A stretch of DNA of 62,552 nt. It comes from Schmidtea nova (Eukaryota). Under the pieces are notes generated by a model. That model had not been told where the DNA came from, searched no databases, and saw only the letters and a program-made list of their open reading frames with translations. Both the position numbers and the translations under genes were made by a program. Positions 6,146 through 7,831 of the stretch are shown one piece after another; the stretch's first letter is position 1, and each line of letters begins with the position of its first letter. The DNA is taken from NCBI GenBank assembly GCA_044892505.1, contig CM097882.1:514477449-514540000 (forward strand). The letters are read 5' to 3'.

Positions 6146-7831
6146 ATGTTATTGGAATATTTACTAGAACTTAATGAAGATTATAAAAATAATCTAAGAT
6201 TCGGTGCATATGACCTGTCAGATAAATTGACCGTCATGGTCATTGGGCTGCTCATCATTGGTAGCGCGACAACGTCTTACAAGTTTTACATCAATTCTCC
6301 TCTCATGTGTTTCACAGCCAACAATCCTACTGGGGAAAATTTCATTGAATTTGCAACGAATTACATTTGGGCTCACGGATCCATTCCAGCTTCCTCACTG
6401 AACCGATCTATGATAAGTGGAATAGGCGAATGGCAGGCAGCATTGAAGGATCAAGGTATTCATTACTATCAATGGGTCCCTATCATCTTTTTGTTACAAT
6501 GCTTGACTCTTCTACTGGTTCGATATCTTTGGCAGTCAACAGCCTCTACAAGGGTTTCATACAATCTCAACTCGCTGCTATCGAAATGTGTCAGCGCGCA
6601 TTCAACAATTGAGGAGGGCCAAATTAAAGAAATATCATCAATGCTGCTACAGACAGTTGATAAAGATTATTCCTCCACTAGCTGCTCCAGTAAAGTCAAA
6701 ACATTCATTCAAAATATGCTTGGAATTCCCTGCTTCTCGAGGCGTATTGGAAACTGGATGAGTTCCAATTATATCTCATACAAAATTTTAATAATCTGCC
6801 TTTGCTTATTGCAAGCTCTCACTATTGGTTGGATATTCAATGTCACCCCGTTGGACGTTTCGGAAATTTGGACCGGCTCCGATGAGTTCAGCAACAGAAA
6901 CTTTCCTAGATCAGTGATCGGATTTGTGCCAGACGTGGCCGTGCTGGGATCATACAACAGTTACACGGTCAACTGTATCATGTCAATCAACCTGATCAAT
7001 GAGAAATTGTTCATCCTCGTGCAATCATTACTGATATTTCTCGCATTTGTCAATTTGTGCAGTTTGATCTCCTGGACGGTCGACATCGGATTGCAATGGT
7101 CCAGGGTCCATTTCATCAACAAATACCTCCGGGAATCAAATGCCACTGAAAGCCTGTCTAGATTTGTCAACAGCCATTTGAAATGTGATGGGATATTCAT
7201 GTTGAGAATGATCAAGAAGAATTGTGACAACCATTTGGTTCGACGTATTGTCAATCATTTATGGACTGAGTTCAACTGTAAGTTTGACGCTAATCAGCCC
7301 ATTGACCTTCCATCAAATCTTTCGTGTTCATCCGATCAAATATTTCTATATTTGACAGGTGGCATTTGCTGTGATGATGTTGTCATAATTGATCCATTTG
7401 TATCTCATGAGATTCTTGATGGATGTGGATCATTTGATGCTCTGATAGACAACTATGAGACTTTTCGCACCGCAAGGCTCATTCTGGCTCCAATTAGTGT
7501 GGGAAGTAAATGCTGGACTCTGTTTGTGTACGATACTCAATCTGGTAATTCGTTCACTTTGGATCCTTTAGTGGCAGGCAATTCATCCAATGACAACGCA
7601 AGGATTGGATCAACATTCACCGCAGAATTGAATAAATATCGCAATCGAGGAGAAGTACGTTATGAATCCCAACAAAATATTGAAAGAGTCATGGGGTCGA
7701 GTATCAATGACAGTGGACCAATTATTTGTGGATACGCAACACATTTATGTACCAGTTTACCTTTGACCAGTCCAATAGATGCCACTAGTATCAGAATGGC
7801 AATGCGGGAAATATGTCCAGATCTCGATTGA
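6146..7831 (+). CDS. inx: Innexin (gap-junction/pannexin-like channel) with C-terminal Ulp1/SENP (peptidase C48)-like domain
   Basis: Innexin signatures HYYQWVP, four hydrophobic segments, FPR and VNCIMSINLINEKLFI. The last ~150 aa match the SENP8/Ulp1 motif order (LILAPIS..KCWTLFVYD..FTLDP..NDSGPIIC). Possible 81-nt in-frame intron at 7278-7358. Confidence 0.92.
   Translation: MLLEYLLELNEDYKNNLRFGAYDLSDKLTVMVIGLLIIGSATTSYKFYINSPLMCFTANNPTGENFIEFATNYIWAHGSIPASSLNRSMISGIGEWQAALKDQGIHYYQWVPIIFLLQCLTLLLVRYLWQSTASTRVSYNLNSLLSKCVSAHSTIEEGQIKEISSMLLQTVDKDYSSTSCSSKVKTFIQNMLGIPCFSRRIGNWMSSNYISYKILIICLCLLQALTIGWIFNVTPLDVSEIWTGSDEFSNRNFPRSVIGFVPDVAVLGSYNSYTVNCIMSINLINEKLFILVQSLLIFLAFVNLCSLISWTVDIGLQWSRVHFINKYLRESNATESLSRFVNSHLKCDGIFMLRMIKKNCDNHLVRRIVNHLWTEFNCKFDANQPIDLPSNLSCSSDQIFLYLTGGICCDDVVIIDPFVSHEILDGCGSFDALIDNYETFRTARLILAPISVGSKCWTLFVYDTQSGNSFTLDPLVAGNSSNDNARIGSTFTAELNKYRNRGEVRYESQQNIERVMGSSINDSGPIICGYATHLCTSLPLTSPIDATSIRMAMREICPDLD

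What the first reader, a model, noticed from the sequence alone, without database searches (positions are those of the whole stretch)
6146..7831. Innexin fused to a catalytically dead Ulp1/SENP-like domain
After TM4 the open frame continues into about 150 aa with the C48 SUMO/NEDD8-protease motif order: VIIDPFV, LILAPIS, xWTLFVYD, FTLD and NDxGxIIC. The catalytic His position reads Cys (KCWTL for HWSL), Asp is kept, the catalytic Cys reads Ser (NDSG for DCG), and the oxyanion Gln is absent. I know of no innexin with this architecture. It suggests a channel with a cytoplasmic pseudo-protease that could bind SUMO/NEDD8/ubiquitin-like conjugates and couple channel gating or trafficking to UBL signalling. 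The ORF is intact in a region where most genes have decayed.
Basis: partly seen in the sequence, partly recalled or inferred. Interest (0 to 1): 0.85.

Follow-up and report, generated by a model that had tools for sequence, protein, structure and literature searches.

The report
Innexin fused to transposon-type dead protease
One uninterrupted gene encodes a gap-junction-type channel protein (innexin) joined at its inner end to a catalytically dead SUMO-protease-like domain whose closest known relatives sit in retrotransposon proteins; the combination looks unreported, but whether it is used or is a recent accident is not known.

Summary
ORF 6146-7831 (+) encodes 561 aa. Residues 1-382 are a divergent innexin (Pfam E 2.7e-44). 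Residues 383-561 are a real C48/Ulp1-fold domain: library-wide E 1.1e-15 to a protein that passes Pfam's C48 cut-off, and an AlphaFold model whose top PDB matches are NEDP1/SENP8, SENP1/2/3/5 and Ulp1. His, Cys and Gln of the active site read Cys, Ser and Gly; Asp is kept.

Three points are new. (1) All six relatives of the tail carry a live-then-dead tandem pair of C48 domains, and four also carry a reverse transcriptase. They are R2/NeSL/Utopia-like non-LTR retrotransposon proteins, so the tail is most likely a captured transposon domain. (2) The only near relative of the innexin (84% identical, collinear from Met1) ends at residue 382, exactly at the junction, so the tail looks like a lineage-specific addition. 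(3) No other innexin-C48 fusion was found.

The tail is cleanly bounded, open (chance 8e-6 if old and neutral) and keeps 17 of 23 family-conserved positions. Expression, age and function are untested, and binding of ubiquitin-like proteins is conjecture. I rate it a new variant of a known kind (transposon-domain capture), of moderate interest.

The parts
6146..7831 (+). Whole ORF, 561 aa plus stop: innexin-C48 pseudo-protease fusion in one uninterrupted frame
   Evidence: the ORF listing; Pfam; first in-frame upstream stop at 6104
6146..7291 (+). Innexin part, aa 1-382. HYYQWVP motif at aa 106-112. Hydrophobic segments at about aa 107-129, 209-236 and 281-316; TM1 at about aa 28-50 is placed by homology. 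One Cys of each extracellular loop is missing.
   Evidence: PF00876 aa 28-376, E 2.7e-44; INX-6 alignment; 84% identity and collinearity with the 382-aa P0001; hydropathy
7292..7828 (+). Added tail, aa 383-561: C48/Ulp1-fold domain with active-site columns Cys/Asp/Gly/Ser in place of His/Asp/Gln/Cys. About aa 383-391 is a low-confidence linker; the folded domain runs from about aa 396.
7278..7358 (+). Candidate 81-nt in-frame intron (GTAAGT ... pyrimidine tract-AG), considered and disfavoured. Either way the frame is kept.
   Evidence: Read from the sequence. GTAAGT occurs 12 times in the window and only once in the ORF. However, homology to relatives' coding sequence starts at aa ~383, and the model puts a helix at aa 396-406; its 10-residue block has mean pLDDT 86. 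No tool predicted this intron and no relative shares it.
6074..6079 (+). TATA-like motif 67-72 nt upstream of the ATG (inference only)
   Evidence: motif scan
7994..7999 (+). AATAAA 163 nt after the stop (ATTAAA also at 7946): possible poly(A) signals (inference only)
   Evidence: motif scan

Best explanation
This is a lineage-specific chimeric gene. An intronless, divergent innexin paralogue was ancestrally about 382 aa long, as its nearest relative still is. It has lost its stop codon and runs in frame into a 179-aa C48 (Ulp1/SENP)-fold domain. That domain belongs to a family otherwise found at the N-terminus of R2/NeSL/Utopia-like non-LTR retrotransposon proteins. Shown: one open frame; innexin homology for aa 1-382; C48 homology and fold for aa 383-561; loss of three of the four catalytic residues; transposon affiliation of all detectable relatives; no reverse-transcriptase remnant beside the gene; a relative that ends at the junction. 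Inferred: innexin C-termini are cytoplasmic (INX-6 structures, established knowledge), so each subunit would carry a ~20-kDa non-catalytic globular domain at the cytoplasmic mouth of the oligomeric channel. There it could act only as a binding or steric module affecting gating, trafficking or partner choice, not as a protease. I put the encoded architecture at about 0.95, transposon origin of the tail at about 0.8, addition after the split from the 382-aa relative at about 0.65, and a maintained (selected) function for the tail at about 0.35-0.4.
For: Single ORF. Innexin E 2.7e-44. Tail to P0002 E 1.1e-15 library-wide, and the relatives pass Pfam C48. The profile hits SENP2, Ulp1 and SENP1. 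AF2 pLDDT 70, pTM 0.72; Foldseek top hits are NEDP1, SENP1/2/3/5 and Ulp1, E ~1e-6, TM 0.6-0.66. Catalytic columns read C/D/G/S against H/D/Q/C. P0003, P0007, P0008 and P0009 combine C48 with RVT_1, and the P0003 region hits R2 retrotransposon proteins at E 1e-56. Ulp1 domains are documented in NeSL/Utopia (PMC4640811) and in Ginger and Mutator elements (PMC2836005). P0001 is collinear from Met1 and ends at aa 382. GC3 is 0.49 in the innexin part and 0.31 in the tail, with equal total GC. For preservation: both ends of the tail coincide with domain boundaries; chance of 179 open codons is 8.5e-6; 17 of 23 family-conserved columns are kept, on a par with the dead domains inside intact transposon ORFs; there is no Met before aa 516, so the domain can only be made as a fusion. 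Innexin differences from P0001 are concentrated in the cytoplasmic loop, TM2/TM3 and the C-terminus, and are few in the N-terminus/TM1, TM4 and the extracellular loops (p 0.012). The two missing extracellular Cys are one from each loop, as expected if a whole disulfide was lost together (the pairing is inference).
Against: There is no transcript, protein or orthologue evidence for the fused form. No second innexin-C48 fusion appears in 1.84 billion representatives or in the 5.8-billion-sequence word search. The tail's GC3 equals the local background (0.28-0.31 GC), as expected for young transposon-derived DNA. The surroundings are transposon-rich. Non-LTR elements usually leave 3' fragments, not an isolated 5' domain, so the route of capture is unexplained. 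Loss of all three catalytic residues is not significantly non-random given 18 of 37 conserved columns lost (about 0.1, my calculation).
Confidence: 0.6

Rival explanations
1. Young neutral accident. A rearrangement or insertion placed a retrotransposon fragment at the innexin's stop codon. The extension has no function, may even harm the channel, and is open only because it is recent. The gene is on its way to decay, like its neighbours.
For: The relative ends at 382. No other fusion is known. Tail GC3 equals background. The catalytic residues are gone. The tail keeps 19 of 37 d1-conserved columns, fewer than the live domains do in leave-one-out tests. A young LTR element with near-identical LTRs lies 1 kb downstream, showing recent transposon activity here.
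Against: Both ends of the tail fall on domain boundaries, and the stop comes right after the last helix. There is no flanking RT or second-domain debris. The frame is intact over 179 codons and the fold is confidently modelled. The tail is only 21-35% identical to any known element copy, although closer copies may exist in the unseen genome.
Confidence: 0.3
2. The tail was ancestral to this innexin lineage and the 382-aa relative lost it through a premature stop, or its annotation is truncated. The fusion would then be older and shared.
For: P0001 is known only as a protein; its downstream DNA could not be inspected.
Against: 382 aa is a normal innexin length, and Pfam's innexin model ends at aa 376. 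Codon usage in the two halves differs strongly. No fused homologue appeared in either search.
Confidence: 0.1
3. The tail is still an enzyme with an unconventional active site (Ser nucleophile, with Cys in the His position).
For: Asp is kept, and the Ser and Cys sit in the catalytic columns.
Against: The general base His and the oxyanion Gln are both absent. The same Cys-to-Ser change marks the second domains of relatives, which also lack His. No C48 member is known to work this way (established knowledge).
Confidence: 0.03
4. The gene is a polydnavirus-type viral innexin (vinnexin) inside a proviral segment of a parasitoid wasp, and the fusion is a virulence-gene variant.
For: It is intronless and divergent, with only one near relative, and the context is insect-like. 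Ichnoviruses carry vinnexin families (PMC9981800).
Against: No direct repeats flank the gene within the window. No rep, cys-motif or vankyrin neighbours were seen. The flanks are 28-31% GC, against 41-43% reported for ichnoviruses. At 152 bits against Pfam it is a weak innexin match, which I judge from general knowledge to be low for the family. No direct comparison with vinnexins was made, because fetching viruses of animals is barred.
Confidence: 0.07
5. Assembly chimera: 7291/7292 joins two unrelated loci.
For: The junction is abrupt and codon usage changes across it.
Against: The frame continues exactly and stays open. There is no N run nearby; the nearest is at 18669. The junction coincides with the natural ends of both domains.
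Confidence: 0.04

Closest known systems
Innexins (PF00876), e.g. C. elegans INX-6 (PDB 5h1q)
   Same: Full-length match to the family model, the YYQWV motif in TM2, a four-helix topology, and cytoplasmic N- and C-termini by homology.
   Different: It is very divergent (152 bits). It lacks the second Cys of EL1 and the first Cys of EL2. It is intronless and carries a 179-aa extra domain that no described innexin has.
Ulp1/SENP/NEDP1 cysteine proteases (MEROPS C48, clan CE)
   Same: Same fold (Foldseek E ~1e-6, TM 0.6-0.66). Same order of motifs. Asp of the triad and the Trp next to the His position are kept.
   Different: His, Cys and the oxyanion Gln are replaced by Cys, Ser and Gly. The direct Pfam score is below the family cut-off. 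It is attached to a membrane channel.
N-terminal Ulp1-like domains of NeSL/Utopia-type (R2-superclade) non-LTR retrotransposons
   Same: These are the closest detectable relatives (21-35% identity). The tail scores 72 bits against a profile of their live first domains and 52 bits against their dead second domains (PMC4640811).
   Different: The window has one domain only, with no partner domain, reverse transcriptase or endonuclease nearby. It is a derivative, not an element copy.
Host genes built from transposon-borne Ulp1 domains (Ulp1 in Mutator-like and Ginger1 elements; ULP-like gene families in plants)
   Same: A transposon-carried C48 domain ends up in a cellular gene (PMC2836005).
   Different: Those cases involve DNA transposons and soluble proteins. 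Here the donor family is a non-LTR retrotransposon and the recipient is a channel.
Pannexin-1 C-terminal tail; iRhom pseudoproteases (analogies for mechanism only)
   Same: A cytoplasmic C-terminal appendage that controls a large-pore channel, and a dead protease used as a regulator (established knowledge; PMC6451368 listed).
   Different: There is no homology of the tail to either, and no evidence here for plugging or regulation.

Membership tests
Innexin (PF00876) | Sequence match to the family model above the curated cut-off, over its full length | tested here: met
   152 bits against a cut-off of 25; model positions 7-333 of 333
Innexin (PF00876) | Four transmembrane helices with the YYQWV motif in TM2 | tested here: met
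   HYYQWVP at aa 106-112. Hydropathy peaks at aa 107-129, 209-236 and 281-316. TM1 falls below my 1.6 threshold but aligns with TM1 of INX-6.
Innexin (PF00876) | Two conserved cysteines in each extracellular loop | tested here: not met
   In the INX-6 alignment the second Cys of EL1 is Ile and the first Cys of EL2 is Gly. P0001 shares this state.
Innexin (PF00876) | Forms hemichannels or gap junctions | not testable with these tools
   -
Peptidase C48 (Ulp1/SENP) | Pfam PF02902 gathering score reached | tested here: not met
   16.8 bits (tail alone) against 20.7
Peptidase C48 (Ulp1/SENP) | Homology to bona fide members | tested here: met
   E 1.1e-15 to P0002, which scores 49 bits on PF02902. 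The profile hits SENP2 at 4e-9 and Ulp1 at 1.5e-6.
Peptidase C48 (Ulp1/SENP) | Clan CE fold | tested here: met
   AF2 pLDDT 70, pTM 0.72. The top ~30 PDB hits are all C48/clan CE. Caveat: the input alignment had only 6 rows, all family members.
Peptidase C48 (Ulp1/SENP) | Catalytic His-Asp-Cys triad plus oxyanion Gln | tested here: not met
   The columns read Cys, Asp, Ser and Gly. It is therefore a homologue but not an active member: a pseudo-protease.
NeSL/Utopia-like non-LTR retrotransposon copy | Reverse transcriptase and restriction-like endonuclease in the same element | tested here: not met
   tblastn of six element proteins against the window hits only 7268-7807, plus one weak RT match inside the unrelated LTR element.
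NeSL/Utopia-like non-LTR retrotransposon copy | Tandem live and dead C48 domains | tested here: not met
   A single domain only
Polydnavirus vinnexin | Gene lies in a proviral segment bounded by direct repeats, among other polydnavirus gene families | tested here: inconclusive
   No flanking direct repeats and no such neighbours within the window, but a left boundary could lie outside the window.
Polydnavirus vinnexin | Closer to known vinnexins than to cellular innexins | not tested

The most novel reading that the evidence does not exclude
The fusion is expressed and maintained by selection. It would be an innexin channel whose cytoplasmic face carries a ring of transposon-derived pseudo-SENP domains. 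These would bind a ubiquitin-like modifier, or a live C48 protease, and so tie channel gating, trafficking or turnover to SUMO/NEDD8-type signalling. That would be a channel-pseudoenzyme architecture without precedent among large-pore channels.
Probability: 0.12. Interest if true: 0.8.

Novelty: new variant of a known kind. Interest (0 to 1): 0.45.

Why it matters
If used, this would be the first innexin with an added globular cytoplasmic domain. It would also be a clear case of a membrane channel recruiting a retrotransposon protein domain, from the rarely retained 5' part of a non-LTR element, as a pseudo-enzyme module. The junction is defined to the residue by a relative that ends there, so the gene offers a clean natural example for dating and tracing how a new domain architecture arises. 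The recurrent live-then-dead tandem C48 module in the donor element family has not, to my knowledge, been described and deserves its own look. If unused, it is an ordinary by-product of transposon activity.

Tried and rejected
Splice model 7278-7358. Consensus-like donor and acceptor motifs bracket 81 nt at the junction, and GTAAGT occurs only once in the ORF. I rejected it as the main reading because coding homology to relatives starts at aa ~383 and the model places a helix at aa 396-406, in a block of mean pLDDT 86. The frame is kept either way. I did not build the joined-exon sequence, because no tool predicts the intron and no relative shares it.

"Tail descends from the already-dead second domain." The shared Cys-to-Ser change and the P0002/P0003 pairwise scores first suggested this. 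P0007/P0008 pairwise scores and class profiles (72 against 52 bits) do not support it. It remains unresolved.

Searches that led nowhere. The word-indexed search of the tail region for fused kin found none. Two metagenome-contig scans were empty. The PDB sequence search of the neighbouring Rep-like ORF found nothing. The viral fold library gave only generic Ulp1-like proteases. There were no tRNA or Rfam hits.

Alignment A2 (full length plus tail relatives) misaligned the relatives onto the innexin part, so it was not used for a full-length fold. The source organism could not be identified; it is an AT-rich invertebrate genome, and a densovirus-like insertion and the transposon content suggest an insect.

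Full report
OBSERVATION. The ORF is as described: 6146..7831 on the + strand, 561 aa, ATG start, with the first in-frame upstream stop at 6104. Pfam places Innexin (PF00876) on aa 28-376 over the whole model (E 2.7e-44, 152 bits). C. elegans INX-6 is the best solved relative (E 1.8e-12). There is no second innexin or tail copy in the window. The only N runs are at 18669-18802 and 51233-51415, far from the gene; they were left alone.

IS THE TAIL A C48 DOMAIN? Directly against Pfam the tail scores below the family cut-off (16.8 bits against 20.7; E 0.0064). An exhaustive phmmer search of the tail (aa 377-561) against 1.84 billion cluster representatives returned only three proteins: P0002 (E 1.1e-15), P0003 (8.9e-9) and P0004 (3.5e-4). 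All three pass the Pfam C48 cut-off. A profile of the tail plus these relatives hits SENP2 (4e-9), Ulp1 (1.5e-6) and SENP1 in the PDB. An AlphaFold2 model of the tail built with that six-row alignment has mean pLDDT 70 and pTM 0.72. Its best PDB matches are NEDP1/SENP8 (E 1.1e-6, TM 0.64), then SENP1, SENP5, SENP2, SENP3 and Ulp1, with essentially only clan CE proteins among the significant hits. The caveat is that the alignment is shallow and consists of family members.

ACTIVE SITE. In the alignment columns where all live relatives read His, Asp, Gln (six residues before the nucleophile) and Cys, the window reads Cys, Asp, Gly and Ser. The domain is a pseudo-protease by the usual criteria.

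WHAT THE RELATIVES ARE. Each relative carries two C48 domains in tandem: a first one with the full H-D-Q-C set, and a second one without His and Gln and with Ser or Thr for Cys. P0003 continues into a reverse transcriptase and a zf-RVT motif, and that part hits R2 retrotransposon proteins in the PDB at E 1e-56, including the C-terminal endonuclease region. A search with the P0003 tandem region found three more proteins of 1126-1372 aa on separate contigs, each with both PF00078 and PF02902. C48 plus RT is therefore a recurring architecture. N-terminal Ulp1-like protease domains are documented in NeSL and Utopia non-LTR retrotransposons (PMC4640811) and in Ginger1 and Mutator DNA transposons (PMC2836005). 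The tail thus belongs to a transposon-borne C48 family. In the window only 7268-7807 matches these proteins. No RT, endonuclease or partner C48 domain lies beside the gene, so this is a derived domain and not an element copy.

WHICH OF THE TWO DOMAINS? Pairwise scores are mixed: slightly better to the dead domain in P0002 and P0003, clearly better to the live domain in P0007 (35% identity over 120 aa) and P0008. Against class profiles the tail scores 72.2 bits with the live-type domains and 51.9 bits with the dead-type domains, while every control domain prefers its own class by 22-170 bits. The tail is therefore somewhat more like the live first domain. Its dead site may be an independent loss that converged on the same Cys-to-Ser change. 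I leave this unresolved.

THE JUNCTION. The only near relative of the innexin part in the 5.8-billion-sequence collection is P0001 (UniParc UPI00060D5749, 382 aa). It is 84% identical, collinear from Met1 without gaps, and ends at residue 382. Homology of the window protein to the C48 relatives begins at about residue 383-385. So innexin homology stops and C48 homology starts at the same point, 7291/7292, with no spare sequence. At the other end, the stop codon follows directly after the last helix of the domain, where the relatives continue into a linker and the second domain. Overall GC is the same in the two halves (0.41 and 0.40), but GC3 is 0.49 in the innexin part and 0.31 in the tail, the latter equal to the flanking DNA at 0.28-0.31. 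Together these results point to a separate origin and to addition of the tail to a ~382-aa innexin.

A SPLICE MODEL, CONSIDERED. Bases 7278-7283 read GTAAGT, the only such hexamer in the ORF and one of 12 in the window. Bases 7340-7358 are a pyrimidine-rich stretch ending in AG. The 81 nt between them are a multiple of three, so the two domains stay joined whether or not it is spliced. I think it is not an intron. The segment encodes residues homologous to the relatives' coding sequence, and it includes the model's first helix (aa 396-406, in a block of mean pLDDT 86). No tool predicts this intron and no relative shares it, so I did not build the joined version.

IS THE GENE PRESERVED? Five points favour preservation.
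- The chance of 179 stop-free codons is 8.5e-6, and the other two frames carry 8 and 17 stops.
- The tail keeps 17 of the 23 columns conserved across all 11 relative domains. It keeps 19 of the 37 columns conserved among live domains, against 14-18 for five of the six dead domains, which sit inside intact long transposon ORFs (the degenerate second domain of P0004 keeps 3).
- There is no Met in the tail before aa 516, so the domain can only be made as a fusion.
- The 59 differences from P0001 are unevenly spread (p 0.012): 6-10% in the N-terminus/TM1, both extracellular loops and TM4, against 21-26% in TM2, the cytoplasmic loop, TM3 and the C-terminal region. That is the pattern of a constrained channel protein.
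- The two missing extracellular cysteines are one from each loop. This fits loss of one whole inter-loop disulfide; the pairing itself is my inference.

Several points count against preservation. There is no expression or orthologue evidence. There are no other fusions of this kind in the databases. The tail has background-like codon usage. The neighbourhood is transposon-rich. Loss of all three catalytic residues is not significantly non-random (about 0.1, given 18 of 37 conserved columns lost).

MECHANISM. Established knowledge of innexin topology (INX-6 structures) puts the C-terminus in the cytoplasm, at the channel's cytoplasmic dome. The fused protein would therefore carry one ~20-kDa C48-fold domain per subunit around the cytoplasmic entrance. 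Without His, Gln and Cys it cannot be a conventional protease. The most likely role, if any, is as a binding or steric module. Binding of SUMO, NEDD8 or ubiquitin is possible but unsupported. The Trp beside the His position is kept, but the position corresponding to the second Trp of the SENP clamp appears not to be (my reading against known SENP motifs). Another possibility is that it binds a live C48 domain, since in the donor family a C48-fold domain always sits beside a partner. These are inferences.

CONTEXT AND SOURCE. The window is AT-rich (GC 0.23-0.43 per 2 kb) and rich in mobile elements (see the noticed items). Nothing marks the gene as part of a mobile element or retrocopy: there are no flanking repeats and no poly(A) tract. 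A polydnavirus vinnexin was considered. There are no flanking direct repeats and no polydnavirus-type neighbours, and the flanks are much more AT-rich than reported ichnovirus DNA. I did not scan the viral collection with the innexin or fetch vinnexins, because fetching viruses of animals is barred, so this rival is weakened but not excluded. The source organism remains unknown.

NOVELTY. Both domains and the process (capture of a transposon domain by a host gene) are known. The combination appears unreported: no such protein turned up in the two large searches, and no paper in the library pairs an innexin with a C48 domain. I rate it a new variant of a known kind, with interest 0.45. It is a clean and curious architecture, but it rests on one locus with no evidence of use.

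POSSIBLE SLIP, DECLARED. Adjoining ORF bounds could be read as the places where reading frames change in virus-like elements.

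Noticed in passing
window 58436-62552 (to the window's end): Parvovirus/densovirus-like endogenous element in ambisense layout. On the - strand is a Rep/NS1-like ORF (58436-59767) with a P-loop and a weak geminivirus-Rep-middle-domain hit. On the + strand is a VP-like region from 60006 that opens with a parvovirus-type phospholipase A2 domain (PF08398, E 1.8e-13). The VP-like region lies in more than one ORF. 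I did not establish whether that is native or a break, and no breaks were counted or located.
   Followed up: partly
window 8860-13851 (- strand): LTR retrotransposon 1 kb downstream of the gene. Its LTRs are 96-100% identical over about 300 nt, so it is a recent insertion. Zinc-knuckle, aspartyl-protease, RT and RNase H domains are found, but they are spread over four separate ORFs, so the gag-pol reading is interrupted at least three times. The type of interruption was not determined, and integrase was not looked for.
   Followed up: partly
relatives P0002, P0003, P0004, P0007, P0008, P0009 (not in the window): The retrotransposon-borne C48 module is always a tandem pair. The first domain has an intact H-D-Q-C set. 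The second lacks His and Gln and has Ser or Thr for Cys. A fixed live-plus-dead protease pair at the N-terminus of an R2-superclade element is, to my knowledge, undescribed.
   Followed up: partly
window 20075-21472 (+): TRAF-like gene with RING, TRAF zinc-finger and MATH domains, in two adjacent ORFs. This may be an intron or a break; it was not examined.
   Followed up: no
window 24291-24836 (+); 27325-29489 (-); 47899-49974 (+): The first is a hAT-transposase C-terminal dimerisation domain (PF05699, E 7.7e-11). The other two are long ORFs (519+202 aa and 691 aa) with no Pfam match that look transposase-like by eye.
   Followed up: no
window 6146-7291 and P0001: This innexin lineage lacks one Cys in each extracellular loop (the second of EL1 and the first of EL2). 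This fits loss of one whole disulfide and may bear on whether the protein can dock into gap junctions or acts only as a hemichannel.
   Followed up: partly
window 30786-33169: A dense nest of long imperfect inverted repeats (73-142 nt arms, 75-92% complementary) plus a 101-nt tandem duplication. One related copy lies near 54142-54297. It is probably a foldback or MITE-like element.
   Followed up: no
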